Below are positions 5,941 to 43,184 of a stretch of DNA of 64,000 nucleotides, piece by piece. The notes under the pieces are model-generated. The model ran no database searches. It was not told the origin of the DNA and worked only from the letters and a program-made list of their open reading frames with translations. The first letter of the stretch is position 1. Every line of letters begins with the position of its first letter. A program made the position numbers and the translations under genes. The stretch lies in the sequence record MK250028.1; one strand, written 5' to 3'.

Positions 5941-5945
5941 CAAAT

Positions 5946-7022: not shown

Positions 7023-7034
7023 CTAATCAATAAT

Positions 7035-8269: not shown

Positions 8270-8342
8270 GCTGGATTAGCACAGTTGGTAGTGCGACGCA
8301 CTTGTAATGCGTAGGTCGTTGGTTCGAATCCGACATTCAGCT
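8270..8342 (+). tRNA. trnT: tRNA-Thr(TGT)
   Basis: ACGCA-CTTGTAA-TGCGT. Confidence 0.96.
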
Positions 8343-8369
8343 CAACATAACTTAATAATGTTTTTATAT

Positions 8370-8665: not shown

Positions 8666-8683
8666 ATTTTTATGTTTTTATAT

Positions 8684-8756
8684 TGCGGGATGGAGCAGTT
8701 GGTAGCTTGCAGGGCTCATAACCCTGAGGTCGTGTGTTCGAGTCACACTCCCGCTA
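8684..8756 (+). tRNA. trnM: Initiator tRNA-fMet(CAT), copy 2
   Basis: Identical to the 2784 copy except for two compensated pairs in the anticodon stem. Confidence 0.95.
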
Positions 8757-8878
8757 CTAGTATGATGCATTTATTTTATGAATATGGATAACTGTTCGCG
8801 ATTGTGTATCTATAAAGTAATATTATAAATGAGGAAATATGAATGACAGTGATAATAATTGTACAATAAAACACTGCA

Positions 8879-8948
8879 TCCTGTTTGTTGTAACGAAAGC
8901 ATTTTCTCTTGAAAAGTGAAGGTTACGGTTTAATTCCGTAGACAGGAA
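8879..8948 (+). pseudogene. Degenerate tRNA (possible CTT/Lys anticodon)
   Basis: TCCTGTT/GACAGGA acceptor and TACGG-TTTAATT-CCGTA T-arm; weak D and anticodon arms. Confidence 0.55.
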
Positions 8949-9089
8949 CAAATTTTAATAGTCTATATTTAATTATATAGAATCGTAACTACAAGAACAT
9001 TAAATATTTTTAGTGGAAAGTCTTGGAGACCATCGTATTGGTACTGAGTTATAAGGTTCTCACAGAGTATAAACCTTAATTTTTTATTT

Positions 9090-9175
9090 GGAAAGGAAAT
9101 TGCGACGGCTCGCAAGCTTGTCTTGAAAACAAGTCGTACAGTGAAATGTATGGGGATCGACACCTCTCCTTTCCG
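9090..9175 (+). tRNA. trnS: tRNA-Ser(TGA)
   Basis: CTTGT-CTTGAAA-ACAAG, long variable arm, G73; T-loop ATCGACA. Confidence 0.88.
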
Positions 9176-9237
9176 CATTTTGTTTTACATATTTAAAGAC
9201 ATTATATATTTATAATATATAATGTCTTTAATTTTTA

Positions 9238-9245
9238 TATAAATA
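9238..9245 (+). promoter_or_regulatory. T4-type late promoter-like TATAAATA
   Basis: Exact match to the T4 late consensus just upstream of a TAG-containing gene; TAAATA recurs before several other TAG genes. Confidence 0.4.
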
Positions 9246-9267
9246 TTGAAATTTATTTTATTCACTT

Positions 9268-10260
9268 ATGAACAAATATATAAAGCAATTAGTTGAATAT
9301 TATTTTCATAACGAAAAAGAATTATATGAAAACAATTATAGAAAATTTAGAGAGAATTTTAATTGGTCTTATGAAAGACGATTATTATATCAATATAATA
9401 ATGATGTAGATTTTGATAATATAGTAAATGAAGAATATCATATAAGTGATGTTTTTGATGATGTTATAGATGTTATAGGAAATATTTATAAGGATAATAT
9501 AGATATAAGTAATGATATAAAAGTATATACAGGATATAATTTTAATATAAAAGATTCTTTATGTAAAAAACTAGATAATGAAAATATAAAATATCCTATA
9601 TATGTTTATATATTAAACGATACAGAATCAACTTCATATTCATATATAAAAAGTGAAGATAAGAATAATAATGAAATTGTTATATATTTAAATTCATATA
9701 TGATATAGGATAATATATAGTTATTACGTGATTCATGTAAACATGAGTTTTTACATATTAGAGAAATGTATGCATTAGAAGATAAAGATGTTTTATAGTC
9801 TAATAAAAATAAATTACCTGATGATGAAAAAAATCCTTTTAACTGGGATAATCCAAATTATTTTGATAAAAGTTTAAGATTATGTTATATATTTAATAAG
9901 TCTGAAGAACGAGCAAGATTAAATGCAGTATATGAACATATTAAATCAGAAGATGAAGATATTGATTCATTAAATAATATAACGTTATTAAACGAAATGA
10001 AATAGTGTATAAACACATTAAGAACTATTTTTATTTCTAATAATTATGGACCTATGGAAATATATAATTACTCATGCTATAAATATCATTTGATAAAATA
10101 TAAGTTAAACAAATATCATTTTGATTATAGACCAAGATTATCTGAATATTCATAGGATGACAAAGATAAATTTTAGGCAATGATATTTGAGTTACAAATA
10201 AATTATAGAAAATTCAAATAGGATATAAAGAAAATAATTTATAATAAATTTCATAAATAA
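9268..10260 (+). CDS. HExxH putative Zn metalloprotease (code 15)
   Basis: 330 aa open with TAG=Q; CKHEFLH motif. Confidence 0.7.
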
Positions 10261-10291
10261 TTATGGATAGTTTTGATAAAGAAATAAAGAT

Positions 10292-11065
10292 ATGAATATA
10301 ATAGGAAATTATATATATGGTTCAGAAGATTCAACTGATGTAGATATTGCATATATAGTTGATGAATTACCATCATTACAAGAATGTAAAAAGTTTTGTT
10401 CGGCTGATAAGAATGAAAACAGAAACTTAATAACGATAAATAACGGTATTATAACTAATTGTTATAAAGGAACAGTTGATGAATTAAATAATGCGATATT
10501 AGATACATATAAGTTACATGAACAAAATACAGAATTACTTATTAATAGAAAGGTTGGTAGAGATATACCATTGAAACTTATTAGAGCAATACGTGCAATG
10601 TTATCACATCTTTCTAGATCGCAATATAGAAAAGAAATAAAATTAGCATTAAGAAGTAATTGGTATAAGAGGTTAGACGTATTATTAAGTATTAATTTAG
10701 AATATATTGATTTTGATAAATTAAACAATAATATGTCAAGAGAAGATATATTGAAATTATTTGCATTTCAAATAGGTCAATGCATGGGACTTATATATGC
10801 AAGAAAAGAATTATATACAAAAAATGATGTTATTACATGGATAGGCAGTAATCTCGGTTATTGTCTTGATGATTATTTAAAACGAAAATATACAAGTTTA
10901 AATATATTAAATTATTTAAAAGATAAATTAATCTACCAGATTCGTTATAATTTTCCAGCAATAGAGTGTGATAATAATATAGTAAAATTTTTAAAGGACG
11001 GACATAATAAATATTATGATTTAATGCAGGAATGCCAAATAAATATTGAAAATAAAGATATTTAA
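10292..11065 (+). CDS. Pol-beta superfamily nucleotidyltransferase-like protein
   Basis: N-terminal YIYGS..STDVDI (GS..DxD) motif. Confidence 0.6.
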   Translation: MNIIGNYIYGSEDSTDVDIAYIVDELPSLQECKKFCSADKNENRNLITINNGIITNCYKGTVDELNNAILDTYKLHEQNTELLINRKVGRDIPLKLIRAIRAMLSHLSRSQYRKEIKLALRSNWYKRLDVLLSINLEYIDFDKLNNNMSREDILKLFAFQIGQCMGLIYARKELYTKNDVITWIGSNLGYCLDDYLKRKYTSLNILNYLKDKLIYQIRYNFPAIECDNNIVKFLKDGHNKYYDLMQECQINIENKDI

Positions 11066-11068
11066 TAT

Positions 11069-11455
11069 ATGAAGTTGATTTATAACAATATTATTCCTCC
11101 ACATGGATTTATAGCTATTAATATTTTTGGAAATCTTTTTGTAAGGAAAGAATATGAATATAAATTAAAGAATGATAATTATAAGAAAAGAGTATTAAAT
11201 CATGAATCTATCCATACAGAATAGATGAAAGATTTTGCAAGTTTTTTACCAGAATGTGTATAGCAATATATAGGTGGCATAATATTCTATATAATATATT
11301 TCTTTGAATGGTTATGGAGAGTCTTGTTTACAAAACATAGATTTTCACATTAGGCATATAGGAATATAACATTTGAATAGGAAGCCTTTACAAATGAATC
11401 AGATTTAGAATATTTAAGTAAACGAAATCATTTTGATTAGTGGAAAATATATTAA
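11069..11455 (+). CDS. Small HExxH protein (code 15)
   Basis: 128 aa with TAG=Q; LNHESIHTEQ and AYRNITFEQEA. Confidence 0.7.
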
Positions 11456-11460
11456 TATAA

Positions 11461-11497
11461 AAAGGATGTTAATTAAGTTTAACATCCTTTCTTTTTT
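11461..11497 (+). terminator. Intrinsic terminator
   Basis: AAAGGATGTTAA/TTAACATCCTTT stem plus T-tract. Confidence 0.8.
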
Positions 11498-11510
11498 CAT
11501 ATAAACAATG

Positions 11511-11518
11511 TATCTTTG
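11511..11518 (+). promoter_or_regulatory. Bacteroidota primary-sigma -7 element (TAnnTTTG)
   Basis: TATCTTTG upstream of 11564; the same octamer occurs at 23886 and (minus strand) 55016. Confidence 0.6.
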
Positions 11519-11563
11519 TAACTGTATAAATGAAGTAATAATTAATTAAAAATTATAATAATT

Positions 11564-11920
11564 ATGGTAGATCGTTTAAATCAAGAGTTAGAGCTGGATG
11601 ACTTGGTACTTATTGCGCATCCAAAAGTTTCAACATTGCTACGTTGCATTGTTACCAAGATCAATGCAAAGACAGTCACAGTAGCAGCACTCCCAGAGAA
11701 TGACAAAGAGAATGAGGCTGCACAATATTGCCAACATAATATGGCTGCTATAGGCGATCACAAGTTTCATGGAAACTATTTCAGAATAACAAAAGGATTC
11801 AATCGTCGTCCTGAGGAAGTTGTGAAGATTGGTCATTATCAAACAGTGCAAGACAATGGCAAAGATGTTCATTACTCTATTGTTGAAGTTGGTGATGAAG
11901 AACTTTGGCCAACTGATTAA
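11564..11920 (+). CDS. Hypothetical protein
   Basis: 118-aa ORF, TAG-free. Confidence 0.75.
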   Translation: MVDRLNQELELDDLVLIAHPKVSTLLRCIVTKINAKTVTVAALPENDKENEAAQYCQHNMAAIGDHKFHGNYFRITKGFNRRPEEVVKIGHYQTVQDNGKDVHYSIVEVGDEELWPTD

Positions 11921-11936
11921 TAATTAAATATAAATA

Positions 11937-12188
11937 ATGATTATGCAAAATATAGCAAATGAAATAAAAAATAGTAGTATAAAATTTCATAGTAATAAAT
12001 TAAATGGATTAGTAGATATGGTTATGTCTAATGATTCTAGTAATAAAATAGAATTACTACCAATTAATGATAGGGCATTAATTTATACTATGTATTGGTG
12101 TACATCTGAACATAGTAATCTATCAAGATATGAATTTGATAGGCTATTAGAAATGTCAAGGAAATTACGTAACTATTTAAATGAGTAA
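11937..12188 (+). CDS. Hypothetical protein
   Basis: ORF track; overlaps the start of the next gene. Confidence 0.65.
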   Translation: MIMQNIANEIKNSSIKFHSNKLNGLVDMVMSNDSSNKIELLPINDRALIYTMYWCTSEHSNLSRYEFDRLLEMSRKLRNYLNE

Positions 12189-12501
12189 AATAATGGTAAT
12201 AAATAATTCAAATATAAATACTTATATTAAGTTCGCAAGTGAGAAAGTATTGAATTACATTAAAGATTTTAATTCATACTTTGATGCTGATGAAGTATAT
12301 GACATTTTAAAAGAGTTATCTGAATATGATGTGAATATTATGAAATTCAATAAATATATCGGATTTCTTGTATGTCAAGTGTATAAGGATTTTATTAATA
12401 ATGAGATGATTATTGAAAAAAATACAGATTTTCAAAATTTCATTATTCCTATCATTATTAATATAAGTGATAATATTTTAAAAGATAAGATTGAACTATG
12501 A
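12181..12501 (+). CDS. Hypothetical protein
   Basis: ORF track; ATGA coupling to the next gene. Confidence 0.65.
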   Translation: MSKIMVINNSNINTYIKFASEKVLNYIKDFNSYFDADEVYDILKELSEYDVNIMKFNKYIGFLVCQVYKDFINNEMIIEKNTDFQNFIIPIIINISDNILKDKIEL

Positions 12502-12644
12502 CAGACGAACAATTAAAGAAGATATATGATAAGATTAATGAGTTGGTAGACACTGTTAATAAATTAAAAAGTATTATTGCAACTCAAGATAATAAGATAA
12601 GAATATTAGAGATTAAGTTAAATAATGTAGAAAATATATTGTAA
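12498..12644 (+). CDS. Small coiled-coil hypothetical protein (48 aa)
   Basis: Read from sequence; ATGA and TAATG overlaps with neighbours. Confidence 0.6.
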   Translation: MTDEQLKKIYDKINELVDTVNKLKSIIATQDNKIRILEIKLNNVENIL

Positions 12645-13006
12645 TGATAAGTAGTATAATTTTAATGTTATGTTTTTATATGTTTATTATTTCATTAACA
12701 TATCATAGAGATATTCAGGTAATAAACATATTTAATTTTTTTGGACCCATAGAATATACTATAAGATATATTGAAGAATTTGACAATGATTCAAAAATAT
12801 CAAGAAAATACTATAAAATTTATTGGAATTACTTCAGTATTTTGCCATTTTTTCACAATTTTTTGAGTAAAACTGATAATCAGATAGTATATACTGTAAA
12901 TGATGAAACTGAGTTAATTTCCAACTATTTTGTAACATATGAGTCCGCTAGAAATTTCTTATATAAGACAAGAGATTTCACTAAATTTATATTAAATGAA
13001 GAATGA
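12644..13006 (+). CDS. Hypothetical protein with N-terminal TM segment
   Basis: ORF track; hydrophobic N-terminus. Confidence 0.65.
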   Translation: MISSIILMLCFYMFIISLTYHRDIQVINIFNFFGPIEYTIRYIEEFDNDSKISRKYYKIYWNYFSILPFFHNFLSKTDNQIVYTVNDETELISNYFVTYESARNFLYKTRDFTKFILNEE

Positions 13007-13389
13007 AAAATATATTTAAAATAATTAAATTACTTTTCTCTTCAAAATAGTATGTAATATATGCTGTTGATAAAAAGGGAGAACAAGTAAAAGAATAGTC
13101 TAGTAATATTAATGAAACGTTTTGTCACCATATATATGATGATGCAAGATAGACTTTAATTAATACTGTTGGTGAACAAACATATGGTGAAAAATTAGAA
13201 TCATATGAACCAGATTTATTTAACGCATATAAAGAATCAGATTATCAAATAGCAAAATCTGAATATTTGCAAGCAGAATTAGATTACTATAAATTAGTGA
13301 ATAATCCTATGAGTGGAGACGCTAATATCTTATTCACAAGTTATTAGAGATTACAATAGCTAAAGAAACAATATGAAAATTTTTAGTAA
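13003..13389 (+). CDS. Hypothetical protein (code 15, 6 TAG)
   Basis: 128 aa open with TAG=Q; ATGA/TAATG coupling on both sides. Confidence 0.7.
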
Positions 13390-13754
13390 TGATAAAGTTT
13401 AAACATAAAAAGTATAATAAAACTAATTTTGATACTATTAATGTAAAAACAGCTAAAGAAGTTTGTGATATAATAATTAATAAGAAAACACAAGAACTTA
13501 TTAAGAAATGTCCAAGAACATTTAATTATATTAATAATGCAATAAATGAATCTATACGTTTATATTTTACTTCATGTATTATTTACAATAATATATTAGA
13601 TTATAATATAACATTAGATTTAAGCTGTATAAATTTTGATTTTATGAAAAAATCAAGATTTGATGTTATTAGCGATATATTAGAAGTGTATAGAAATAAA
13701 GGATATAAAATAATTCATAATGATAAAGATAAAATAACTATGTATTTTAATTAA
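13389..13754 (+). CDS. Hypothetical protein
   Basis: ORF track. Confidence 0.65.
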   Translation: MIKFKHKKYNKTNFDTINVKTAKEVCDIIINKKTQELIKKCPRTFNYINNAINESIRLYFTSCIIYNNILDYNITLDLSCINFDFMKKSRFDVISDILEVYRNKGYKIIHNDKDKITMYFN

Positions 13755-13803
13755 TATATATATAGACTTTATTAAAATTATATTATATAAATATATAGTT
13801 AAT

Positions 13804-13888
13804 GGAGAGTTAACCTAACGGGGTTAGGGACAATCTGCTAAATTGTTCGTCCATGTATGTGGATGTGGGTCGGGACCACAGCTCTCCG
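13804..13888 (+). tRNA. trnS: tRNA-Ser(GCT)
   Basis: ACAAT-CTGCTAA-ATTGT, long variable arm, G73; T-loop GTCGGGA is atypical. Confidence 0.88.
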
Positions 13889-13920
13889 CAAAAAATCCAC
13901 AACAGATTTAAAGATGTAGT

Positions 13921-14309
13921 GGTCTATAAGTTCGTTCCTTAATGAGAGATTATCACATTATATATGTGCACAAAAGAAATAATGTGATGGACCATAATGA
14001 ATAGATTATCTTAATTTTGGTATCTTCTGCAAGATTCTGATTATTGATAGAAGGTAGTTAAGCTAATTTCATATTCATTTCTATTACAGACGAAGAAAGA
14101 GGAACATTGTTTACAAGTAATAAAGAGTAACCAAATGTTATTGTTATATAGAACTGATATAATAATAGGTGAATGAAACGCTTGGCGCCAATATTAATAA
14201 AAGTGGTTGTTTATGAAAGTAATGTGTTTGATATAAAGATCTGATTAACTCATAAAGTCAAACCGGTATATATTAAATTTTTATATATAAGATAGTAAGC
14301 TTATAGATT
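13921..14309 (+). ncRNA. Candidate large structured ncRNA (about 390 nt) between trnS and trnQ
   Basis: 12-bp closing stem 13921-32/14298-309 and several internal 8-10-bp helices; no long ORF seen. Confidence 0.5.
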
Positions 14310-14313
14310 TTAT

Positions 14314-14384
14314 TGGGATATATTGTAATGGTAGCAACAGGGTTTCTGAGTCCCTTAGTACTGGTTCGAATCCGGTTATCCCAA
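14314..14384 (+). tRNA. trnQ: tRNA-Gln(CTG)
   Basis: TGGGATA/TATCCCA acceptor, AGGGT-TTCTGAG-TCCCT. Confidence 0.88.
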
Positions 14385-14443
14385 CATATTCGTAATTTTT
14401 ATTTTTTATTTTTTTATTTTTAAAGGATTTATACATAAAGAGA

Positions 14444-27447: not shown

Positions 27448-27469
27448 TTTTTATTCTATATATAATAGA

Positions 27470-27506
27470 AAAGAGACTTAGAACAAAAATACTAAGTCTC
27501 TTTTTA
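27470..27506. terminator. Bidirectional terminator
   Basis: AAAGAGACTTAG/CTAAGTCTCTTT between convergent genes. Confidence 0.8.
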
Positions 27507-27551
27507 TTTTTTATAAACATTCACATTTAATTTTAATATAAAATTATAAAA

Positions 27552-28178
27552 TTAAAGCATACATTCATCCCACCAGTCAGCGCGGAAAGTCATATCACAA
27601 GACATCAAATCTGTACTGTCATAATTAAGTGTAGGACCAGGTACACCTGTTGTAGGGAAAATGTAATAGAATACCCATTGCCAATATGGATTACCAGCAC
27701 GATCTTGCATAGTAATAGTCATTGATGGCGCCACGTAATCTTTCTTAAGGCCTTCACGACCTGTAAGAGGATCATAAATAAGGTCAACCCATTCACGAAG
27801 GAACTTATATGTGTAGTTCTCAGGTGAACCGTTATCATATGAAAGGTTAAGGTTAAAGTGTAATGTCAAGTCGACATTAGTTCTATCCGGTTTTGCACCA
27901 GCGAATGAACGTTGTGCAAATTTATACTTTTGCTCTGTTGCGTTAGCACCAAATGAAGTAGAAATCTGACCAACACTTTGTACACCTTCAAGAATAATAT
28001 TCAAACGTTCATCATCTGTTGTATCAACCATACCTTGAGGACAACTTAATTGAACAGTAAACAAGTTCAAATATATAGGTTCCCATAATGAGGTAGATAC
28101 ACGGCTATTTCTAAAATGTGATAATCCTAACAAACCTGGAGATTTCTTAGGTAAAGTAGGTCCATTTGTTACTGCCAT
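27552..28178 (-). CDS. Tail tube protein (T4 gp19-like)
   Basis: EPIYLNLF, RSFAG, YKFLREW.DLIYDPLTG..GLKKDY pattern of myovirus tube proteins. Confidence 0.7.
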   Translation of the reverse strand: MAVTNGPTLPKKSPGLLGLSHFRNSRVSTSLWEPIYLNLFTVQLSCPQGMVDTTDDERLNIILEGVQSVGQISTSFGANATEQKYKFAQRSFAGAKPDRTNVDLTLHFNLNLSYDNGSPENYTYKFLREWVDLIYDPLTGREGLKKDYVAPSMTITMQDRAGNPYWQWVFYYIFPTTGVPGPTLNYDSTDLMSCDMTFRADWWDECML

Positions 28179-28331
28179 ATTATTATTAAAGTATATTTTA
28201 TTTTATTTATCTGTGAAAAATAGGTAGATTAAATGTAGACAAAAATATTTTTTTATAGTATAAATTAAGAATTTAAAAAAAATAGAGATAAATAATTAAG
28301 TTCAAAAAATAAATTTTAAATAAAGAAGAAA

Positions 28332-28505
28332 ATGAAGAAGATTTTATTTGTACTTGCTGCTGTTGTAACAATGAGTTTCGCTTCTTGTGGTAACAAGACT
28401 ACTACATGTGGAACAGCAAATGATTCAACTGCAACAGATACTACAGTTGTTGATTCTACAGCTACAGATTCAACTGCAGCTGATTCTACAGTTTGTCCTA
28501 TGTAA
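28332..28505 (+). CDS. Small lipoprotein with D-(S/T)-T repeats (57 aa)
   Basis: MKKILFVLAAVVTMSFAS-C lipobox; mature part has DST, DTT, DST, DST, DST. Confidence 0.75.
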   Translation: MKKILFVLAAVVTMSFASCGNKTTTCGTANDSTATDTTVVDSTATDSTAADSTVCPM

Positions 28506-28678
28506 TTCATAAGACAAACTTTATTTTAGAGAAGATTATTGTGTAATTAAAATATAACCTAATATAAGGTTTATATTAAACTAATTTTAGAGATATACTA
28601 AATATATTCATTTATATTTGGTATATCTTTTTTTATTTAATAAATATTTAAAATTTATTTAACTGAATTATATAATAT

Positions 28679-35778: not shown

Positions 35779-35861
35779 TTAAATATTTTCTTTTGGTAAA
35801 TAAACACGTGTCTTTTGTTCTTTCTGACGTCCATCAGACCAATTCGAAATTTTAGTTAAAT
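35779..35861 (-). CDS. nrdD: NrdD exon 6
   Basis: (Y)LTKISNWSDGRQKEQKTRVY..stop; phase matches exon 5. Confidence 0.9.
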
Positions 35862-36106
35862 CACAATATACCCGAACTTTCATTCTATTTTAAAGGGGTT
35901 AGACTATACCACTAACTTCTTGAGTTACATCTTGGTAGTCGTTGAGGGCTTTTATTTGTTTCGTATCAAATAACTATCCCTGCTGATTATCCATTGTTAT
36001 ATCATTAGAATTTTTACACTTTGGTATCTAATGCTTTAGGAACTTCCAGCATATTCGATGTTTGCTATATATGTCACCATATATAGGGGCATTTAATTAA
36101 AAATTT
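35862..36106 (-). mobile_element. Group I intron 5 of nrdD (245 nt, no ORF)
   Basis: 5' U.G P1 (GGGT/GCCC), 3' omega-G, P/Q/R/S-like ATGCTGGAAG, ATAATCAGCAG, CTCAACGACTA, GTATAGTCT. Confidence 0.9.
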
Positions 36107-36445
36107 ACCCGATTATTCTGTCATATAAACTTACATGAACTGATCCACACTTTGGACATACACTAAATGGTGTCTTTGAAATATATCCACAATCTTCACA
36201 TTTACAATTAGGAACATTAAATGTCCAATATTGACAACCATTCTCTGCCGCAAATTTCATAATGTGAACAATCTGTTTCTTAGACAAGTGCTCTGACAAA
36301 TTGAGATGCGCTGCTGAACCACCATCCAAAAAATCTCCAATATAGTTCTTACCATGTAAGGTAATCTTATCAAAGATTGACAATGTTTTATCATTTGGTT
36401 TGAATATGTAAGACGCATACAGGTTAGTGTCTGTTGGTACCCAAT
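36107..36445 (-). CDS. nrdD: NrdD exon 5
   Basis: (Y)WVPTDTNLYASY..GGSAAHLNL..CPKCG..RIIG. Confidence 0.92.
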
Positions 36446-37194
36446 CAACTCTGTTACATGATTACATAATAATTTTAATATTATTGTTGAATGTAATCTG
36501 ATTTATTAATATATTCATTTAGATTTATTAAACCTGCATGAATTTTCCTATGACAATTTGAACATACACATACACATTTTTTTATTTCTTCATATAGTTT
36601 TTCTTTACCTCTCCCTCGATGTTTACCTATTGTAAAATCTTTTTCATTTGGATCTATATGATGAAAATCTATACAACATGGTTCATATTCACTACATATT
36701 ATACATGGATTCTTTAATGAATATAACCATTCTGTTTTTCTTTTTTGTGAACGCTTATTTTTGTTCATTATGTATTTCAGGATGTGCTTTTCTCATCTAT
36801 TTCCTATATAATTTTCTACATTCTTTACATACTGCACGTCCTTTTTCAAACATTTCTATAGACAATTCTTTACCACATTTATTACATATTTTTGTTGTCA
36901 TATATATTAAATTATGTTTTATTATTTATCACCGGAACATGACAAAAATAACATAACCCAATTATATTAATAAACGCTTAATTATTTCTAATCAAGTCTC
37001 TATGTTACCATAGAGTTCGGACTATTGCATAGTTTTGTTTCACAACAAAACTCCTTTTTATTTAGTCTCTCAGGCTGCCCATAACATTGTTGTTATTGCT
37101 TGCCCCTCGTTATCCTTACTACCGGTACCTAAGGTAATAAAATGTAAGGAACTTCGAGTCAATTAAAAAAGGTTTTACATGGACATTGTTGTCT
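36446..37194 (-). mobile_element. Group I intron 4 of nrdD (749 nt)
   Basis: P1 TGGAT/GTCCA, omega-G, CTGAGAGACTA and AATAGTCC core motifs; carries an HNH gene. Confidence 0.9.
36481..36901 (-). pseudogene. Intron-encoded HNH endonuclease split by a +1 frameshift (36901-36755 and 36768-36481)
   Basis: N-terminal CNKCG..CKEC piece stops at TAA after an A5 run; the HNH part (FHHIDP..CSNCHRKIH) continues in the +1 frame with its own ATG. Confidence 0.7.
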
Positions 37195-37679
37195 ATCCAT
37201 CTTCAGAATCCCAATTATAATTCTTTATTGCCAAACTTTCAGCTGGTATACATTCAGTATTGAACGTTAACTTATGACCGTTAAATGTACCTGCAGCTTC
37301 TTGATTCTTTTGCTTTATATATCCAAATATTGTTTGACAAAGTTTTTCATAATGAGGATTTACATTACAAGTAATTCCTAAGAATTCTGCCATTTGATTA
37401 AGACCATTCAAACCAATTGTTAAATATTGCTTATTCAAATTAATAAATCCTGCTTTATATACAGGTAATAATCCTGCGTCATACATATCCCAAAGAAGTT
37501 CATTATATGCTGTATGATATTTATATACTCTATCAAGAATATTACCAAAATATTCGCACATATCATCATAATGCTCTTCTACATTTTCTTTTGTTACTCC
37601 AGATTTCTTAACACTGTTAAACCAGTCTTGAGTTATGCGACTAAGATTCAGGGTTATCACACTTTTACTTCCTGTTTGA
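37195..37679 (-). CDS. nrdD: NrdD exon 4
   Basis: (I)QTGSKSVITLNL..QYLTIGLNG..ECIPAESL..WDSEDG. Confidence 0.93.
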
Positions 37680-38905
37680 CGTTTTCTCCATATATTTCTA
37701 TATGGTCCGGGTCATATCTTATGTTTATTTAAATAATAAACATTGCACTATTTCGGCATTTAAAACGATTCGTTTCCTAAAACGTTACTACGTATCAATA
37801 GTAGTCCTACTCCACCTGCTCATCACTTAGGGGATGACCTCCACACACATTAATAATTTTTATATGTTCTACCTATTAACATATTCCTAAAATTATTCAT
37901 TAAATAATTTTTATATTTACCGATTTTTAATTCTTCAATAGATTTGCCATTATTATATTGTTCTCTTAAATAAACAACTTCATCTTTAGATAACAATGGT
38001 AACTTCTATTTACATTTATCAGTTCTAATAGGCATTTTTACATGCATATATGATTTTCCAAATAATATTTTATTAAATCCACTCCATGAATATAAATTAC
38101 TATATTCTTTAAAAATATCATCTTCTTTTTCACCATTTACAAAATATCTTATTCTTATGTTTAATACTTCTTCATCAGATAAATTCTTAGAATTTGCATG
38201 CATATTTCCTCTACGTGTTCTTCGATCTGATTTATAAAAATCATTTACTTTATCTGTATTATATTCTATACCAATTTCAGGTCTTGTATAATAATGCCAA
38301 TATTTTGAAAATCCACTTTTTGACATTCTATCTTTATACATTTCATATACTTCTCCAAAAGTATATTTCATAGAATAACGTATTTTTCTTAATTCTAATA
38401 ATTCATTATCATTTAATATTGCTTTGGGATGCTCCTCCCCAACTTTTATTATAGTTGCAGAATGTCCACCCAATGTAGAATTATATCCATTATTATAACT
38501 ATCATATAATTTAATGTAATATATTTCTTTATTATCAGCTTCATCCTAATTAGGAACATTATCTTCTAATATTGAAAAATTTGATTCATTAATATTATAT
38601 TTTCTCATTGCTCTATATAATTTATAATCACTATGTTTCATATCATTTAAATGTTCTCTTACTCTTATATGATAATGATGTGTCTACCCAATATATACTT
38701 TTCCATTAGGAAATGATATTTTATAAATTGTAAATATTTTATTCATATATTATAAATGTAAAATTATAACATATTTATATTAACTTGGCTCGGTATTACC
38801 ATGCATATAGTTTCACAACTTATGTTTAGGCTTCACCGATGCATTAATATCGCTATATTAATACATTGCTTGATTAGCAATTAAGCACATAAAGGACCCA
38901 AGTTG
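37680..38905 (-). mobile_element. Group I intron 3 of nrdD (1226 nt)
   Basis: P1 GGAT/GTCC, omega-G, GTAATACCGAG and AAGATATGACC motifs; carries GIY-YIG gene. Confidence 0.87.
37850..38746 (-). CDS. Intron-encoded GIY-YIG endonuclease (code 15)
   Basis: 298 aa with TAG=Q; TIYKI..VYIGQT..E.YYI..GYN. Confidence 0.88.
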
Positions 38906-39667
38906 ATCCCTAAATTTCCATTTGTGAAGTTGAATTCCTTTGTTTGTATCTTATTCTTAAGTCTGCAGTTATGTGTTATATTTCCATTAGGCATTAAGAA
39001 ATATGGTTCAAGATTCTTATCGCAGAGTTCTACACAATAATAATCTTTTGGTTCATCAAGATTTACAACTTCAACCTTTGTAATTTTTCTTATAACAATG
39101 TCTTGATCTACATCTTTAAAATCATTTCTAAACATACCCATATATTGTCCATACTCAAAGATAAGTTGATCTCCTGTTTGAAGCAAATATGCTTGCTTAT
39201 CTTTAATCATCTTATCATCATCAATAATAGGGAATATATGATCCGGTGTAACTCTCATTACATTTCGTGATTCATCCGGATTAAAATCGTCTGGAGCGAA
39301 ATAAATTCTTACTTCTTGAACTGCTTCTGCTTTTACAAACTTAGCATTTACCCATTCACCTGTACATTTACCTGTTGTACCATTAAAATTCATATGATAT
39401 ACATTAATAATTTCATCCTTATGCTTTTCATATGCATTTTTAAATGACTCAACCATATATGCGTTTGAACCTGCGTTTTCTTCCATATTACAAGGTTCTA
39501 CATACATGAATGGAGTATCACCATCGAAACAACAACTTGATAATGAATCAACTGTATCTGACATATATGTAAAGAATGAATGACCTCTTGCATATTCATC
39601 CGCCACAAAATCTGCAGATTCCTTATCAAGGAATTCACCATCCTTATATACTAATGCGAAACTTTCC
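38906..39667 (-). CDS. nrdD: NrdD exon 3 (contains mini-intein)
   Basis: (V)ESFAL..GHSFFTYMSD..SLSSC[intein]CRLKN..GNLG. Confidence 0.93.
38968..39531 (-). mobile_element. Mini-intein (188 aa) between the two Cys of the NrdD SCCR active-site motif
   Basis: Starts CFDGDT, has VTPDH block B, ends THN followed by Cys; too short for an endonuclease domain. Confidence 0.9.
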
Positions 39668-40487
39668 CATTTATATTCTATATAGTTCGTTACACTATAT
39701 ACGTTCATAATAATGAACTGCTTTATGTTACCATAAAGATTAGACTATATCACAATCCTATAAATATAGGATTCTCCCCATTTCCACTCACTTGAGTGTA
39801 CTTCCTTTCGGAATAGTCGTTGAACCTTATTATATAAATGAATATTTATGACCATAATATAATCTATTTGCATTTATCGATTTTACTAATCCTGATATAC
39901 ATGCAGTTCCTCCAATATTTTTAATAACTTCGGACATTGATGAATATATTATATTATTATCTAAACATTTTATTTTCTTTGGAAACGTTTTTCCCTTCAT
40001 CGTATTACCAAATGTTTTAATAGAATATAATTCATTCTCTGATTGTGTGCACCATTCTAAATTATCTACTCTATTATCTGATCTATTACCATTTAAATGA
40101 TTTACAAATGGTTTATTTTCAGGATTTGGTATAAATTCTTGAGCAACAAGTCTATGACATAAATATCTAGTTTTAATAGAATTTTGCATTAATGATATTC
40201 TTAAATAACCATCTAATGTATATTCTACTTTTAATGGTTTACCTTTATACGGACGTAATCCACTCCATCTACAAGGCACCATTCTATCTTTACTTCTGAA
40301 ATTACCTAAATTACTAACTTCAAATGCTCCATCATATCCTGTTATACTTTTCCAAATTTCTTCCATAATATTCTCTTATATAATCTTGGTTGCTGATTAT
40401 CTAATAACTTCGCATATTTATTAGAGTTCCCAGCAGTTAAAGGAGTTTTTCAATAATAAATTACTTTATTATGCCGCAGATTGATTT
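39668..40487 (-). mobile_element. Group I intron 2 of nrdD (820 nt)
   Basis: P1 CCGT/GCGG, omega-G, CTGCTGGGAA, AATCAGCAACC, GTTCAACGACTA, GATATAGTCT. Confidence 0.9.
39830..40366 (-). CDS. Intron-encoded NUMOD4-HNH endonuclease
   Basis: EIWKSI.GY..EVSNLG; HRLVAQEF..VNHLNGNRSDNRVDNLEW. Confidence 0.9.
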   Translation of the reverse strand: MEEIWKSITGYDGAFEVSNLGNFRSKDRMVPCRWSGLRPYKGKPLKVEYTLDGYLRISLMQNSIKTRYLCHRLVAQEFIPNPENKPFVNHLNGNRSDNRVDNLEWCTQSENELYSIKTFGNTMKGKTFPKKIKCLDNNIIYSSMSEVIKNIGGTACISGLVKSINANRLYYGHKYSFI

Positions 40488-40659
40488 ACGGGGAAGGTGA
40501 TTATCGTACGAAGACGTTCCTTATTAAACCATATCATGAAGTCTTTCTGTAACCATGAAACACTTTCCCAACATGGTCTTGTTCCTTCTTCATCAGGAAA
40601 TACAAATTCACCAAACATACCTTCAAAGAACGGTTTATCAAAATAAGAGAAATTTACAA
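40488..40659 (-). CDS. nrdD: NrdD exon 2
   Basis: (F)VNFSYFDKPFFEGMFG..WFNKERL..ITFP(V). Confidence 0.92.
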
Positions 40660-42067
40660 CATTTTTTCTTCTACATAAATCGTTACTTTATGTACGTTAC
40701 TATTTGTAACTGCTCTATGATTTCCATAGACGATTAACGAATTTCACGTTAAAAGGGTTTGTTTAAACCGTTTAGACTATATCACCAAATTTAATTTTCT
40801 TAAATTTGCACCTACACTTCCATAACACTTGTTATGTACTCTACTAACTCATTTAAAGTTTTCGATAGTCGTTGAACTTTTATCCTTGTAGGATAATTAG
40901 CTGCGTATGATTACCCAATCTTTATCGTTTTTACAATCTGATAGCCGTTATACTATCTGCTACTATCTATGTTACCATGATATGCTGTAGATAAAGCTCT
41001 AAGGGACTTCCCGCAATTCAAGGTGTTTATTAACGTCAGCACATGTAATTTCTCTTATAATTTAATTATTACCAAAATTATGTATTTTATACATGTGACA
41101 ATTTTTACAATATGTTATAAGATTATCTATGTTATTAAGTTCTTTATTTTTTATCGCTAAATTAAATAATTCATCAAAATTATCAGTAGGATTTAATTCT
41201 GGATGTTCTGATAATAAATTATGAAATAATATTTTAAATGGAACTATATGATGAACTTGAAGATTTTCATGACAACCGCATAGCTAACAAGTATTATGAT
41301 CTCTCTCTATAACTTCTGGAACTAATCGATTAAAATATGTTCTTATTTTATTACCTAATCTTGTAGTATCTGTTGTATATGGAATATTAGTAATATTTAA
41401 ACTATTTAATACTCTATTAATTACAGCTATTGTACAATTATATCTCCGTGCCAATTCTGTTTTTGATATTGACTATTCAATATATAAATTATATAATTTT
41501 TTATAATCATTAAAATCTTCTGGTATTTCTTTTTTATGATAATTCCACATAGATTCTGCAAAAGTACGTCTTTTAATCCCATTATGTTTTAAATGACTTC
41601 TTATAGTAGTTGCTGAACAGTTAAATATTTTACCTATTTCTACTGTAGATTTACCATCATTATATAATTTTATTATTTCCTAATCATTTGTATCATCATA
41701 TTGTTCATAAACTTCATAATTAGTATTTTTTATATTATATTTTTTAAAATATCTATTAATAGTACCTTTATGACATTTATATATTTCTGAAATTTCTTTC
41801 ATTGTTAAACCATTATTAACATAATTTATTAAATCTTCTTTTTTAATTATTAATTTAGATTTTTCAATATTCCATTTTCTTAAATATTCTTTAATATTTG
41901 CTAATGTTGTATTTCCTTCTTTAGCACACTATTTTCGTGTTAAACCTTTAATAACATAATTTTCATATAACCAATCTCTATCTTTTGTAAAATATCTATA
42001 ATTAGACATAATTTCAGATATGTAAAATTACATACAGGATTATGTAATTTTTAATTTATTTTAGTTT
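40660..42067 (-). mobile_element. Group I intron 1 of nrdD (1408 nt), endonuclease gene in the P1 loop
   Basis: 8-bp P1 GTCAGCAT/GTGCTGAC spanning the ORF, omega-G, AATTGCGGGAA, GTTCAACGACTA, GATATAGTCT. Confidence 0.9.
41062..42009 (-). CDS. Intron-encoded HNH endonuclease with repeated HTH-like N-terminal region (code 15)
   Basis: 315 aa with TAG=Q; CQLCG..LQVHHIVP..NLITYCKNCH. Confidence 0.85.
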
Positions 42068-43184
42068 ATGCTGACTATAATCCTCTGGAGGCCGCAGGTT
42101 GGTTAATTGAATACACGACCTATTGAAAGAATTGTTGAATACATGAACCAATAGTTCTTGTACCATCACCAATCTTAATAGGGTTTGTAAAATCTTTTAT
42201 TGAACCTTCTACATCATACTTAGAAAGTTCTGTTTCATATTCTTTAAGTTCCTCATCTGATAATGGTCGTTCTGAATTATAAACAAGTTCATCACGAAGT
42301 TTGTTTAATTCGTCTGAACCAAAATCATGATTTCTCAATGTATCTACATCTTTACACCAATAATTAGATTCATTAAGAAGTTTCCTATATTTAGGTCCAA
42401 TCTTATAAAATTCTTTACTATGCAAATGATAATCTTCACCAAACTCTTTTCTTGCAAAATAATCAAAATAAACAAGAAATTCCGATGTTGCAACTGCACC
42501 TGCAAATTGAGCAGCAACTGCAAATACAAGATTTACATACATACCACAATAAGAATCAAGATTTTGTGGATGACATGAAAGACCTCCTATTTTTTCTAAA
42601 CCATTATGAAGGAATGGATACATAGTTATACTTGTGCAATACGGACTTATGGCACCAGCGAAGCTAGACTCATCGTTCTTATATATAATATGGTTTTTTA
42701 AATCTTTTTGATATTGTTTTGCTTTAAAATTTGGATATAGTTCTTTAAGTTTCCTTGTAATCATACCTCTGCTTACAAGAATATTATCAGCTTTATGAAT
42801 TTCAGCATTTAATACGCCGATATTCTTAGAAGAAACGTTAGAATTATCATCTACAGTACTATTTGCAGTATTAGATGCATTCTTATATCTTTCAATAAAT
42901 GCTTCTTTGTTAGCAACCCATTCTCTGATTTCCTTCTTCTTATTACGATAAAGAATAAATTCTTTCGCAACTTTAGGACAATCATGAGAATACAAACTTG
43001 TTTCAATTTGATCCTGTATTTCCTCTACAGGAATACCATCATATGGTGTTATTGAGTTTGCAATATTAGCTATAGTATCTTTAGTATACTTAGTTTTCGT
43101 AGACTTAAACGCCTCACGAATCGCTCGTTTAACTGTCTAAACACTATAGTTCTCAAAACTACCATCACGTTTCGTTACCTTCAT
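42068..43184 (-). CDS. nrdD: NrdD exon 1 (anaerobic ribonucleoside-triphosphate reductase, ATP cone), 3 TAG
   Basis: MKVTKRDG ATP cone; SPYC.SITMYP; Q[TAG]VVYSINQPAASRGL[TAG]SA. The six exons sum to 2958 nt in phase. Confidence 0.95.

What the first reader, a model, noticed from the sequence alone, without database searches (positions are those of the whole stretch)
35779..43184. nrdD split by five group I introns and an intein, fully reconstructable
Seen: six exons (1117, 172, 762, 485, 339, 83 nt) sum in phase to 985 aa, or 797 aa after intein removal. Each intron has a U.G P1 pair and omega-G. Four carry endonuclease genes (HNH, NUMOD4-HNH, GIY-YIG, HNH). Intron 5 separates the glycyl-radical Gly from the next Tyr. 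The enzyme needs five splicings, three TAG readthroughs and protein splicing. Inference: unusually dense parasite load that may also act as a timing or redox control.
Basis: partly seen in the sequence, partly recalled or inferred. Interest (0 to 1): 0.68.

Follow-up and report, generated by a model that had tools for sequence, protein, structure and literature searches.

The report
Five-intron, one-intein phage nrdD gene

Summary
The window is Prevotella phage Lak-B1/B9, a ~548 kb phage that reads TAG as Gln. On the minus strand, six exons of 1117, 172, 762, 485, 339 and 83 nt join in frame to 985 codons, or 797 after removing a 188-aa mini-intein.

Each of the five insertions is precisely absent from at least one sister Lak genome. 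Each follows an exon-terminal U and ends in G. Each has a P1 helix with a U.G pair, and a full P3-P9 core with textbook R and S elements; a P10 helix next to P1 is clear in four and weak in intron 2. Four carry endonuclease genes; the one in intron 4 is frameshifted.

Rfam scores for the window's own introns stay below threshold because ORFs split the ribozymes. ORF-less relatives in the same gene score above it. A pig RNA run holds an intron-less nrdD contig with the predicted junctions, plus a 312-nt circle that joins the last G of intron 3 to its first base.

TAG here is a genome-wide sense codon, not readthrough. Nothing supports timing or redox control, and occupancy varies from one to five introns among close strains. 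This is a new member of a known kind.

The parts
42068..43184 (-). nrdD exon 1 (1117 nt): ATP-cone plus the N-terminal part of NrdD; in-frame TAG (Gln) at codons 16, 355 and 370
   Evidence: Pfam ATP-cone 1.8e-17 and NRDD 6.4e-23. TIGR02827 5e-60. Colinear with T. maritima NrdD 4COI up to residue 221. The exon end is fixed by intron-less Lak-A1.
40660..42067 (-). Intron 1 (1408 nt), group I. The ORF sits in the P1 loop. The internal guide sequence at 41048-41037 pairs with both exons. Core lies at 41036-40660.
   Evidence: Absent in Lak-A1. P1 is 6 bp with a U.G pair; P10 is 5 bp; P3, P4, P6, P7, P8 and P9 are present. RF00028 gives 33 bits, E 2.5e-7, on the identical Lak-B4 copy. 97-98% identical to the Lak-C1 copy while the exons are 88-91%.
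41062..42009 (-). Intron 1 ORF, 315 aa, HTH-repeat + HNH homing endonuclease; contains 4 TAG codons
   Evidence: Pfam HNH_2 4.5e-6 and several HTH families. phrog_8446 HNH endonuclease 3.3e-31. TAG count.
40488..40659 (-). nrdD exon 2 (172 nt)
   Evidence: Aligns to 4COI residues 229-283. Both ends fixed by Lak-A1.
39668..40487 (-). Intron 2 (820 nt), group I of the IA type with P7.1 and P7.2; ORF in the P6 loop
   Evidence: Absent in Lak-A1, A2 and C1. Its 3' half is 81-85% identical to Rfam-verified group I introns of Staphylococcus and Bacillus phages. nhmmer E 7e-24 for the 3' half and 2e-4 for the 5' half. RF00028 gives 29.3 and 14.7 bits. Helices.
39830..40366 (-). Intron 2 ORF, 178 aa, NUMOD4 + HNH_3 endonuclease
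   Evidence: Pfam NUMOD4 3.4e-14 and HNH_3 9.5e-12. phrog_59 6.9e-39.
38906..39667 (-). nrdD exon 3 (762 nt): 45 extein residues, the intein, then 20 extein residues
   Evidence: The N-extein aligns to 4COI 288-330, ending in SCC. Ends fixed by A1/C1.
38968..39531 (-). Mini-intein, 188 aa, with no endonuclease domain. It has Cys1, a TPDH block B and a terminal HN. The +1 Cys is the conserved active-site Cys of the SCCR(L) motif.
   Evidence: Translation. Pfam Intein_splicing 6.2e-6, below the cut-off. Weak NCBIfam hit to the intein region of archaeal PolII. The nearest ESM Atlas clusters are Intein_splicing/PT-HINT. The insert is absent from 40 more distant nrdD homologues and present in all 15 Lak genomes.
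37680..38905 (-). Intron 3 (1226 nt), group I of a different subtype (P7 is GGUCAU/AUGACC); ORF in the P6 region
   Evidence: Absent in Lak-C1. Helices. RF00028 gives a weak hit on the 5' half. The ORF-less paralogue I4' scores 31 bits, E 5.9e-7. An RNA-run circular contig joins 37680 to 38905.
37850..38746 (-). Intron 3 ORF, 298 aa, GIY-YIG homing endonuclease; contains 3 TAG codons
   Evidence: Pfam GIY-YIG 1.7e-4. phrog_7168 3.5e-20 and phrog_5123 (GIY-YIG) 4e-13.
37195..37679 (-). nrdD exon 4 (485 nt)
   Evidence: Pfam NRDD 5.8e-16. TIGR02827 1.5e-34. Aligns to 4COI 401-504.
36446..37194 (-). Intron 4 (749 nt), group I. Contiguous core at 37194-36998, with the ORF after P9.
   Evidence: Absent in Lak-B3, B5, B6, A1, A2 and C1. 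An unconstrained MFE fold reproduces P1, P3-P6, P8 and P9, z -3.9. Helices.
36481..36925 (-). Intron 4 HNH endonuclease gene, split over two overlapping frames: a zinc-ribbon piece at 36925-36755 and an HNH piece at 36768-36481. Probably frameshifted.
   Evidence: The two pieces match consecutive parts of phrog_2255: profile positions 51-98 (E 6e-4) and 96-175 (E 1e-22). The copy in Lak-B4 is identical.
36107..36445 (-). nrdD exon 5 (339 nt): Cys4 zinc ribbon and the glycyl-radical motif RIIG, plus the first base of the next Tyr codon
   Evidence: Pfam NRDD 1.1e-17. Aligns to 4COI 549-621 and ends at Gly621.
35862..36106 (-). Intron 5 (245 nt), ORF-less group I intron. The guide sequence UUAAAU-GCCC at 36096-36087 pairs with exon 6 (P10, 6 bp) and exon 5 (P1, 4 bp with a U.G pair).
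   Evidence: Absent in Lak-A1, A2 and C1. Helices P1-P10 in canonical order. R element UCAACGACUA and S element AUAGUCU. nhmmer gives only E 0.09 and the fold z-score is only -1.7.
35779..35861 (-). nrdD exon 6 (83 nt): the last 27 codons plus TAA
   Evidence: Matches the uninterrupted C-terminus of Lak-A1. No hit of its own in PDB.

Best explanation
This is the class III (anaerobic) ribonucleotide reductase gene nrdD of Prevotella phage Lak-B1/B9. It has been colonised by five independent mobile group I introns and one mini-intein.

Inferred pathway:
1. A transcript of about 7.4 kb is made.
2. Each ribozyme folds. Its guide sequence pairs with the last bases of the upstream exon (P1, U.G at the cut) and the first bases of the downstream exon (P10).
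3. Guanosine-initiated self-splicing joins the six exons into a 2958-nt mRNA.
4. An in-frame stop within 0-8 codons of each 5' splice site keeps ribosomes out of unspliced ribozyme cores.
5. The mRNA is translated with TAG read as Gln by the phage's own suppressor tRNA, giving a 985-aa precursor.
6. The 188-aa intein excises itself, using Cys1, its terminal Asn and the +1 Cys. That +1 Cys aligns with the catalytic Cys330 of T. maritima NrdD.
7. The 797-aa NrdD is then activated by a phage-encoded NrdG3-type radical-SAM activase.

The intron-borne HNH and GIY-YIG endonucleases spread the introns into intron-less nrdD alleles during co-infection. This explains why occupancy differs between strains.

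Shown here: gene structure, exact boundaries, empty sites, ribozyme elements, endonuclease and intein homology, and lateral spread of I1.
Inferred: that all five introns and the intein splice efficiently in vivo.
For: Identity of the window: 100% match to Lak-B1/B9.

Frame and boundaries.

Empty sites: I4 is missing in B3/B5/B6. I1, I2, I4 and I5 are missing in A1. I2, I3, I4 and I5 are missing in C1. IMG/VR Lak contigs carry one to five introns.

Exon colinearity with T. maritima NrdD leaves no residues missing at the junctions.

Ribozyme evidence:
- P1, P10 and P3-P9 are found in canonical order in all five introns.
- The MFE fold of the I4 core gives the group I architecture, z -3.9.
- The I2 3' half is homologous to Rfam-verified introns.
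- RF00028 gives sub-threshold but significant hits to I1 and I2 and a weak hit (E 0.56) to the 5' half of I3.
- RF00028 scores above the gathering threshold (61 and 56 bits) for the ORF-less I1' intron in nrdD of A-type Lak phages, and 31 bits for I4', a paralogue of I3.

RNA evidence: pig RNA run X8 has a 2973-nt contig (depth 351) joining all exons at the predicted junctions. It also has a 342-nt circular unitig (312-nt cycle, depth 374) joining 37680 to 38905.

Mobility: I1 is 97-98% identical between B1 and C1, against 88-91% for the flanking exons.

Endonucleases. Intein. Code: TAG corresponds to CAA in sister alleles, plus PMC6784885. Activase: TIGR02826 2e-43 elsewhere in the genome. 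In-frame stops just inside each intron.
Against: - No RNA data from a B-type Lak phage, so splicing of I1, I2, I4 and I5 is not observed directly.
- The pig contig is about 13% divergent. It could be the transcript, or contaminating DNA, of an allele that simply lacks introns.
- The circle's gene of origin is not proven. Run X12 shows a related ORF-less intron in a different exon context.
- Rfam finds none of the window's introns at its gathering score. I4 and I5 get no RF00028 hit at all. For those two, classification rests on hand-assigned helices and R/S motifs.
- The I5 fold z-score is weak (-1.7).
- There is no covariation. Helix positions are invariant among alleles.
- P10 of I2 is only 3 bp, and its junction could shift by one base with no change in the protein.
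- The intein scores below Pfam's cut-off, and its single-sequence AlphaFold model is uninformative.
Confidence: 0.88

Rival explanations
1. The stack of introns, TAG codons and the intein is used by the phage as a regulatory gate for NrdD. The gate could be timing through the suppressor tRNA, coupling to the guanosine pool through splicing, or redox-gated protein splicing through the Cys(-1)/Cys1/Cys(+1) cluster. It would be more than a parasite load.
For: The intein sits between two Cys residues and starts with Cys, next to the catalytic Cys of an oxygen-sensitive enzyme. TAG at codon 16 is conserved in all Lak alleles examined. Every intron places a stop just after its 5' splice site. From my own knowledge, not tested here: disulfide-trapped inteins and translation-dependent T4 intron splicing are documented.
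Against: Introns are present or absent among strains that are more than 99% identical (B1 versus B3), and A and C lineages manage with one to three. Forty more distant homologues have no intein and mostly no introns. I1 shows lateral spread. The I4 endonuclease gene is decaying. No experiment or expression data bear on regulation.
Confidence: 0.08
2. The gene is a decaying pseudogene in B-type Lak phages. One or more introns, or the intein, no longer splice, and the phage relies on the host's RNR.
For: The I4 endonuclease gene is frameshifted. I5 and I4 get no RF00028 hit. There is no direct RNA evidence for the B lineage.
Against: All six exons keep an intact frame with no stop other than recoded TAG. 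All catalytic motifs are kept: SCC|CRL, the Cys4 zinc ribbon and RIIGY. Ribozyme helices are invariant across alleles while the rest diverges 8-13%. The same structure is kept in nine independently assembled baboon genomes. An NrdG3 activase is retained.
Confidence: 0.04
3. This is a 'gene in pieces' without RNA splicing. The fragments would be translated separately and assemble, as in Aeromonas phage Aeh1 nrdA, which is split by a free-standing endonuclease gene.
For: Four of the five insertions carry endonuclease ORFs. Such split RNRs exist (PMC3653736).
Against: All five junctions fall inside codons (phases 1, 2, 2, 1, 1). Exons of 172 and 83 nt have no start codon of their own. The split codons rebuild the residues seen in uninterrupted alleles. 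Ribozyme cores flank the ORFs. I5 has no ORF at all.
Confidence: 0.02
4. The insertions are assembly artefacts or chimeras of a metagenome-assembled genome.
For: The genome is a MAG.
Against: The same 8-kb structure is found at 99.5-100% identity in six curated Lak-B genomes, and with one intron fewer in three more. It also occurs in independent IMG/VR contigs. The boundaries obey group I rules.
Confidence: 0.01

Closest known systems
Phage T4 nrdD (sunY) group IA intron with I-TevII
   Same: [quoted passage not shown] The T4 site, after base 1 of the Tyr codon in FQAYE|YEVN, is the same homologous position as the extra Lak intron I1' in Lak-A2, L013 and L015 (QQVV|YSIN).
   Different: T4 has one intron. 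None of the five sites in this window coincides with the T4 site; I1 lies 37 nt downstream of it. T4 has no intein and uses the standard code.
Bacillus phage SPbeta bnrdE/bnrdF and Brochothrix phage A9 nrdE (introns plus an intein in RNR genes)
   Same: Group I introns and an intein co-occur in one phage ribonucleotide reductase gene, inserted at conserved motifs. A9 nrdE has three introns plus an intein (PMC3653736).
   Different: Those are class Ib RNR genes of Bacillota phages. Here it is a class III RNR with five introns, a mini-intein without an endonuclease domain, and TAG-recoded endonuclease ORFs.
Jug (jumbo gut) phage and crAss-like phage split genes
   Same: Gut phages of Bacteroidota whose nrdD, terL and polymerase genes are fragmented by group I introns and inteins. 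Jug nrdD is fragmented in 95 of 104 genomes, with an example in four fragments, and splicing is supported by metatranscriptome reads (PMC12880540).
   Different: A different phage lineage. Jug phages use the standard code. The Lak papers I read report only tRNA introns, and no introns or inteins in protein genes (PMC6784885, PMC8346664). Six exons plus an intein exceeds the Jug example.
Herelleviridae (Twort-like, SPO1-like) group I introns
   Same: The 3' half of I2 is 81-85% identical at the nucleotide level to introns in Staphylococcus phage CF5 and Bacillus phage LBC2. Those score 89-97 bits with RF00028 and share the same P7.1/P7.2, P8 and P9. CF5 has four such introns in tandem within 1.1 kb.
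   Different: Different host phylum and different host genes (a UvsX-like recombinase gene in LBC2; a stretch between structural-protein genes in CF5). Those copies are ORF-less and compact, whereas I2 carries an ORF in P6.

Membership tests
Group I self-splicing intron | The 5' exon ends in U, which forms a U.G wobble at the end of P1 with an internal guide sequence | tested here: met
   All five introns. P1 is 4-6 bp with a terminal U.G: I1 CAGCAU/GUGCUG, I2 CCGU/GCGG, I3 AGGGAU/GUCCUU, I4 AUGGAU/GUCCAU, I5 GGGU/GCCC.
Group I self-splicing intron | The last intron nucleotide is G (omega-G) | tested here: met
   All five end in G, with boundaries fixed independently by intron-less alleles.
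Group I self-splicing intron | P10: the 3' exon pairs with the guide sequence immediately 5' of the P1 strand | tested here: met
   I1 5 bp, I3 4 bp, I4 4 bp, I5 6 bp, each directly adjacent to the P1 strand. I2 has only 3 bp, which is weak.
Group I self-splicing intron | Conserved catalytic core P3-P4-P5-P6 / P7-P3'-P8-P7' / P9 with R and S sequence elements | tested here: met
   Helices were found in canonical order in all five introns. The R element UCAACGACUA is in I1, I2 and I5, and AGAGACUAA in I4. The S element (G)AUAUAGUCU/AUAGUCC is in I1, I2, I4 and I5. I3 uses a different P7, GGUCAU/AUGACC. The free MFE fold of I4 reproduces the architecture. The assignment was made by hand. There is no covariation because the helices are invariant.
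Group I self-splicing intron | Score at or above the gathering threshold of Rfam RF00028 (50 bits) | tested here: inconclusive
   Window introns score below threshold: I1 33 bits (E 2.5e-7), I2 29.3 and 14.7 bits, I3 11.8 bits, I4 and I5 none. ORFs split three of the ribozymes. ORF-less relatives in the same gene do pass: I1' scores 61 and 56 bits, and I4' scores 31 bits. The cmscan tool missed even I1', so its blanks reflect low sensitivity. This threshold is an operational cut-off of one model, not a defining property of group I introns.
Group I self-splicing intron | Precise excision and exon ligation at the RNA level | tested here: inconclusive
   RNA run X8 has an intron-less nrdD contig with the predicted junctions and a full-length circle of an ORF-less I3 homologue. 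These come from a ~13% divergent pig phage and from contigs, not reads. There are no data for the B lineage.
Group I self-splicing intron | Guanosine-dependent self-splicing in vitro | not testable with these tools
   Needs a bench experiment.
Intein (HINT domain, protein splicing) | In-frame insertion in a conserved host protein that is absent from homologues | tested here: met
   A 188-aa insert lies between the two Cys of the SCC|R motif. It is absent from 40 homologues at 36-50% identity and present in all 15 Lak genomes.
Intein (HINT domain, protein splicing) | Splicing residues: Cys/Ser1, block B TxxH, C-terminal His-Asn, and Cys/Ser/Thr at +1 | tested here: met
   Cys1 (CFDGDTPF), TPDH...ITHN, then +1 Cys (CRLKNK).
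Intein (HINT domain, protein splicing) | Sequence or fold membership in the HINT superfamily | tested here: inconclusive
   Pfam Intein_splicing E 6.2e-6 at 26.5 bits, against a cut-off of 35.8. NCBIfam hit to the intein segment of PolII DP2, E 3.4e-5. The ESM Atlas nearest clusters are Intein_splicing/PT-HINT, score 0.91. The AlphaFold single-sequence model has pLDDT 41 and is unusable.
Class III ribonucleotide reductase NrdD (TIGR02827 type) | Glycyl-radical motif, Cys4 zinc ribbon, active-site Cys loop and N-terminal ATP-cone, colinear with solved NrdD | tested here: met
   Tested exon by exon: Pfam, NCBIfam TIGR02827, and PDB 4COI alignments covering residues 51-621. The RIIG|Y motif is shown. 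The joined protein was not searched.
Homing endonucleases (HNH, GIY-YIG) | Catalytic domain recognisable and ORF intact | tested here: met
   The I1, I2 and I3 ORFs are intact with HNH or GIY-YIG domains. The I4 HNH gene is split over two frames, so this feature is not met for I4. Cleavage activity was not tested.
Genetic code 15 (TAG = Gln) phage | In-frame TAG at positions where relatives have Gln codons | tested here: met
   Codon 355 is TAG in B-type alleles and CAA in A1, A2 and C1. Codon 370 is TAG in B1, B3, B4 and C1 and CAA in A1. Published for Lak phages, with a CTA-anticodon tRNA and RF2 (PMC6784885). No CTA-anticodon tRNA lies inside this window.

The most novel reading that the evidence does not exclude
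The maturation chain may be conditionally gated. The most concrete version concerns the mini-intein. It is flanked by Cys(-1), begins with Cys1, and is followed by the catalytic +1 Cys. A disulfide among these could trap it under oxidising conditions. The oxygen-sensitive NrdD would then be completed only in a reduced, anoxic cell. Guanosine-dependent splicing of five introns could in addition tie RNR output to the purine nucleotide pool.
Probability: 0.07. Interest if true: 0.7.

Novelty: new member of a known kind. Interest (0 to 1): 0.4.

Why it matters
- It corrects the annotation of a core replication gene of the Lak megaphages. The deposited genomes carry no annotation, and the papers describing them mention only tRNA introns. 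Some of the 'sequence blocks inserted in genes' they report may therefore be mobile group I introns.
- It gives a natural series for studying homing in an uncultured megaphage: seven insertion sites in one gene, with one to five occupied in any one genome. The evidence includes recent lateral spread of I1 and an endonuclease gene in decay (I4).
- It shows that TAG-recoded endonuclease ORFs are resident in this lineage.
- It warns that standard Rfam scans miss these introns.
- It does not reveal a new mechanism.

Tried and rejected
- Rfam cmscan of the window, at gathering score and at E<=10, found no group I intron. It also missed the ORF-less I1' that RF00028 scores at 61 bits by another route. 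I therefore treated its blanks as a sensitivity failure.
- No whole genome is held for the window. I used Lak-B4, which is 99.5% identical across the 8-kb nrdD region (its intron 4 copy is identical), as a proxy.
- A PDB sequence search with exon 6 (26 aa) found nothing. Its identity rests on the uninterrupted Lak-A1 allele.
- The AlphaFold2 single-sequence model of the intein had pLDDT 41, so I ran no fold search on it.
- R/S-like motif hits at 58570 and a weak nhmmer hit at 48703 lie inside long ORFs. I rejected them as further introns.
- I looked for covariation in I1 and I3 among alleles. The helices are invariant, so this is no test either way.
- I did not build my own covariance model. 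The models that could be calibrated would cover only half-cores of the I2 type, which is already established.
- I did not use the big protein searches. Family scans and PDB left nothing open.
- The joined coding sequence was used solely inside scripts to count frame and stops. It was never printed, saved, searched or folded.
- No complex prediction was attempted.

Full report
**What the window is.** The 8-kb region matches Prevotella phage Lak-B1 and Lak-B9 at 100%, and seven other baboon Lak-B genomes at 99.5-99.7%. The human-derived Lak-A1, A2 and C1 genomes cover only about half of it. These are ~540-550 kb megaphages published as using genetic code 15 (TAG = Gln), with a CTA-anticodon suppressor tRNA and RF2 (PMC6784885). 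The deposited records carry no annotation. The gene lies on the minus strand. GC is about 27%.

**Check of the observation.** Reading TAG as Gln gives NrdD-like open frames separated by endonuclease-like frames. I compared the region with five sister genomes by blastn and inspected every junction. This gave exact boundaries.
- Exons: 43184-42068, 40659-40488, 39667-38906, 37679-37195, 36445-36107, 35861-35779.
- Joined inside a script only, they give 985 codons plus TAA. The only internal stops are three TAGs, at codons 16, 355 and 370.
- Every upstream exon ends in T and every insertion ends in G.
- Intron phases are 1, 2, 2, 1, 1, so the pieces cannot be independent genes.
- Intron 5 falls after the first base of the Tyr codon that follows RIIG. 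The uninterrupted Lak-A1 allele reads ...RIIGYLTKISNW....

**Empty sites.** Each insertion is precisely absent somewhere.

| Intron | Absent in |
|---|---|
| I1 | A1 |
| I2 | A1, A2, C1 |
| I3 | C1 |
| I4 | B3, B5, B6 and the A and C lineages |
| I5 | A1, A2, C1 |

. In IMG/VR I found more Lak contigs.
- One has all five introns. Two have four.
- L013 has only a 366-nt ORF-less intron at a sixth site, I1'. This site lies 37 nt upstream of I1 and is also occupied, with an HNH ORF, in Lak-A2.
- L015 has I1' plus a 285-nt intron at a seventh site, I4' (FLDG|GSAAH).
- L014 has I1, I3 and a 1082-nt I4'.

Forty more distant nrdD homologues (36-50% identity) have no intein and are mostly uninterrupted. 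Six of them have an 840-994-nt insertion at the I2 junction, and four have insertions in the exon 4-5 region. Five introns is the maximum among about 60 loci compared.

**The exons are one NrdD.** I tested this exon by exon and by reference.
- Pfam finds an ATP-cone and NRDD in exon 1, and NRDD in exons 4 and 5.
- NCBIfam TIGR02827 covers exons 1, 3, 4 and 5.
- Alignments to T. maritima NrdD (4COI) are colinear. Exon 1 runs to residue 221, exon 2 covers 229-283, exon 3 covers 288-330, exon 4 covers 401-504 and exon 5 covers 549-621.
- Exon 5 ends exactly at Gly621. From my own knowledge this is the glycyl-radical residue.
- A TIGR02826 (NrdG3) activase is encoded elsewhere in the Lak-B4 genome.

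**Are the insertions group I introns?** The Rfam cmscan tool found nothing in the window, even at E<=10. That blank is a sensitivity problem, for two reasons. RF00028 run through the genome search on the near-identical Lak-B4 record hits:
- the I1 core (33 bits, E 2.5e-7);
- both halves of I2 (29.3 and 14.7 bits);
- the 5' half of I3 (11.8 bits).

It also scores the ORF-less I1' above the gathering threshold (61 and 56 bits), and scores I4' at 31 bits, E 5.9e-7. The cmscan tool misses I1' too.

The 3' half of I2 is 81-85% identical to introns of Staphylococcus phage CF5 and Bacillus phage LBC2, which score 89-97 bits with RF00028. A profile built from those five introns hits I2 at E 7e-24, I1 at 6e-3, I5 at 0.09 and I4 at 1.8. 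All hits are on the correct strand.

By direct inspection, checked by script, every intron has these elements in canonical order:
- P1 with the U.G pair;
- P10 on the guide sequence immediately next to the P1 strand (3 bp and weak in I2);
- P3, P4 and P6 (P6 was not assigned in I3), with P5 assigned in I2, I4 and I5;
- P7 formed by R and S elements;
- P8 and P9.

An unconstrained fold of the I4 core reproduces this architecture, z = -3.9. I5 folds less distinctively, z = -1.7. The ORFs sit in the P1 loop (I1), the P6 loop (I2, I3), and after P9 (I4). Each intron carries an in-frame stop 0-8 codons past its 5' splice site. From my own knowledge, this is typical of phage group I introns.

**RNA evidence.** Only contigs of RNA-labelled runs from other animals were available. 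In pig run X8, a 2973-nt contig (depth 351) joins all six exons at the predicted junctions. Its loose end upstream of 40659 is the end of exon 1. A separate 342-nt unitig (depth 374) reads 38897-38778, then 37863-37680, then 38905-38868. That is a 312-nt cycle joining the terminal G of I3 to its first base, and it lacks the endonuclease ORF.

This is what a fully spliced mRNA plus a full-length intron circle would look like. There are caveats:
- The phage is about 13% divergent from the window.
- DNA carry-over cannot be excluded.
- The contig could come from an intron-free allele.
- Run X12 shows a related intron in a different exon context, so the circle's gene of origin is not proven.
- Nothing bears directly on I1, I2, I4 and I5.

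**Mobility.** I1 is 97-98% identical between B1 and C1 over its whole length, while the flanking exons are 88-91% identical. This indicates recent lateral transfer. The 5' ribozyme part of I3 is 98% identical between B1 and A1, against 84-87% for the exons. Helix strands of I1 and I3 are invariant across alleles.

The endonuclease ORFs are:
- I1: HTH-repeat + HNH (phrog_8446, 3e-31);
- I2: NUMOD4 + HNH_3;
- I3: GIY-YIG;
- I4: an HNH gene whose zinc-ribbon and HNH pieces match consecutive parts of phrog_2255 but lie in two frames. It is probably frameshifted, and the Lak-B4 copy is identical.

The I1 and I3 ORFs themselves contain TAG codons, so they are adapted to this code.

**The intein.** The intein spans 39531-38968 and is 188 aa. 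It has Cys1, TPDH, a terminal HN and a +1 Cys, and sits inside the SCC|R(L) motif. The +1 Cys aligns with Cys330 of T. maritima NrdD. From my own knowledge this is the thiyl-radical Cys.
- It has no endonuclease domain.
- It is present in all 15 Lak genomes at 82-100% identity, and nowhere else in the phage collection.
- It is absent from the distant homologues.
- Family evidence is consistent but sub-threshold.
- The single-sequence structure model was unusable.

**The TAG codons.** Codon 355 is CAA in A1, A2 and C1. Codon 370 is CAA in A1. Codon 16 is TAG in every allele. These are sense codons of a recoded genome, not readthrough.

**Comparison with what is known.** RNR genes are the phage genes most often split by group I introns, and nrdD is the most frequent among them. 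Brochothrix phage A9 nrdE has three introns plus an intein, and SPbeta has an intron plus an intein (PMC3653736). In Jug gut phages, nrdD is fragmented in 95 of 104 genomes, with splicing supported by RNA reads (PMC12880540). T4 nrdD has one intron with I-TevII. I located it after base 1 of the Tyr codon in FQAYE|YEVN. That is the same homologous position as Lak I1', but not as any of the five sites in this window. In full-text term searches of the two Lak papers (PMC6784885, PMC8346664) the only introns mentioned are tRNA introns; there is no mention of inteins or of introns in protein genes.

**Verdict.** The mechanistic reading is well supported, and direct RNA proof is still missing for four of the five introns. 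The reading is five group I splicings, translation in code 15, then protein splicing. The regulatory speculation is unsupported and is disfavoured by the variable occupancy. This is a new, unusually loaded member of a well-known kind.

Noticed in passing
L002 4385-5802 (Lak-A2); L013 11073-11438; L015 11073-11437: A sixth intron site, I1', lies in Lak nrdD 37 nt upstream of the I1 site. It is occupied by a 1.4-kb HNH-bearing intron in Lak-A2 and by 365-366-nt ORF-less versions that score 56-61 bits with RF00028. The site is the same homologous position as the classical T4 nrdD (sunY) intron.
   Followed up: yes
L015 13027-13311; L014 5124-6205: A seventh site, I4', lies between the two Gly residues of FLDG|GSAAH in exon 5. 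It holds a 285-nt or 1082-nt intron whose 5' part is 88% identical over 73 nt to intron 3. One intron family therefore occupies two sites in the same gene.
   Followed up: partly
window 36481-36925 (-): The HNH endonuclease gene of intron 4 is split over two overlapping reading frames, which looks like a frameshift. The Lak-B4 copy is identical. This fits an endonuclease gene decaying after the intron became fixed.
   Followed up: partly
L006 1777-2909 (Staphylococcus phage CF5, PP034390.1 57597-58729): Four Rfam-verified group I introns (50-97 bits) stand in tandem within 1.1 kb, separated by mini-exons of about 35-60 nt. An 'intron encoded nuclease' gene follows. Five introns in one phage gene may therefore not be a record.
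   Followed up: no
Lak-B4 MK250023.1 about 401845-402182 (+); L013's record at 168834-169007 and 300650-300898: Further weak to moderate RF00028 hits (17-42 bits) lie outside nrdD. Lak genomes probably hold more unannotated group I introns in protein genes.
   Followed up: no
window 340-14385 (+): An array of 17 tRNA genes, none with a CTA anticodon. The suppressor tRNA needed for TAG=Gln must lie outside the window. tRNA-Tyr(GTA) at 1792-1875 is called as an ordinary 84-nt tRNA with no intron, both by ARAGORN and by a full-length Rfam match. The original paper reports an intron in this tRNA for baboon Lak phages. The long variable arm of tRNA-Tyr might explain that call.
   Followed up: no
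window about 34000: GC skew changes sign here, from +0.2 before to -0.25 after, and the coding strand switches from + to -. The cumulative skew peaks at this point. It is a transcription or replication polarity switch, about 1.8 kb below the 3' end of nrdD (35779).
   Followed up: no
window 27448-28678: A 1.2-kb stretch with no ORF of 90 aa or more on the + (coding) strand when TAG is read as Gln. It lies in the GC-richest part of the window (0.32) and has no Rfam hit. It may be one of the 'large intergenic regions' reported for Lak phages.
   Followed up: no
Read-laying run X12, contig at window 38778-38909: An ORF-less relative of intron 3 sits in a different upstream exon. That exon ends ...ANYYLG, followed by the partial codon AT (probably Ile), in another gut sample. 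It may be a divergent nrdD invaded at the same NLG|I site.
   Followed up: no
window 39668-40487 and L020, L034-L037, L048: Six distant nrdD homologues (36-49% protein identity, no intein) carry an 840-994-nt insertion at the same exon 2/exon 3 junction as Lak intron 2. I did not test whether those insertions are homologous to I2.
   Followed up: no
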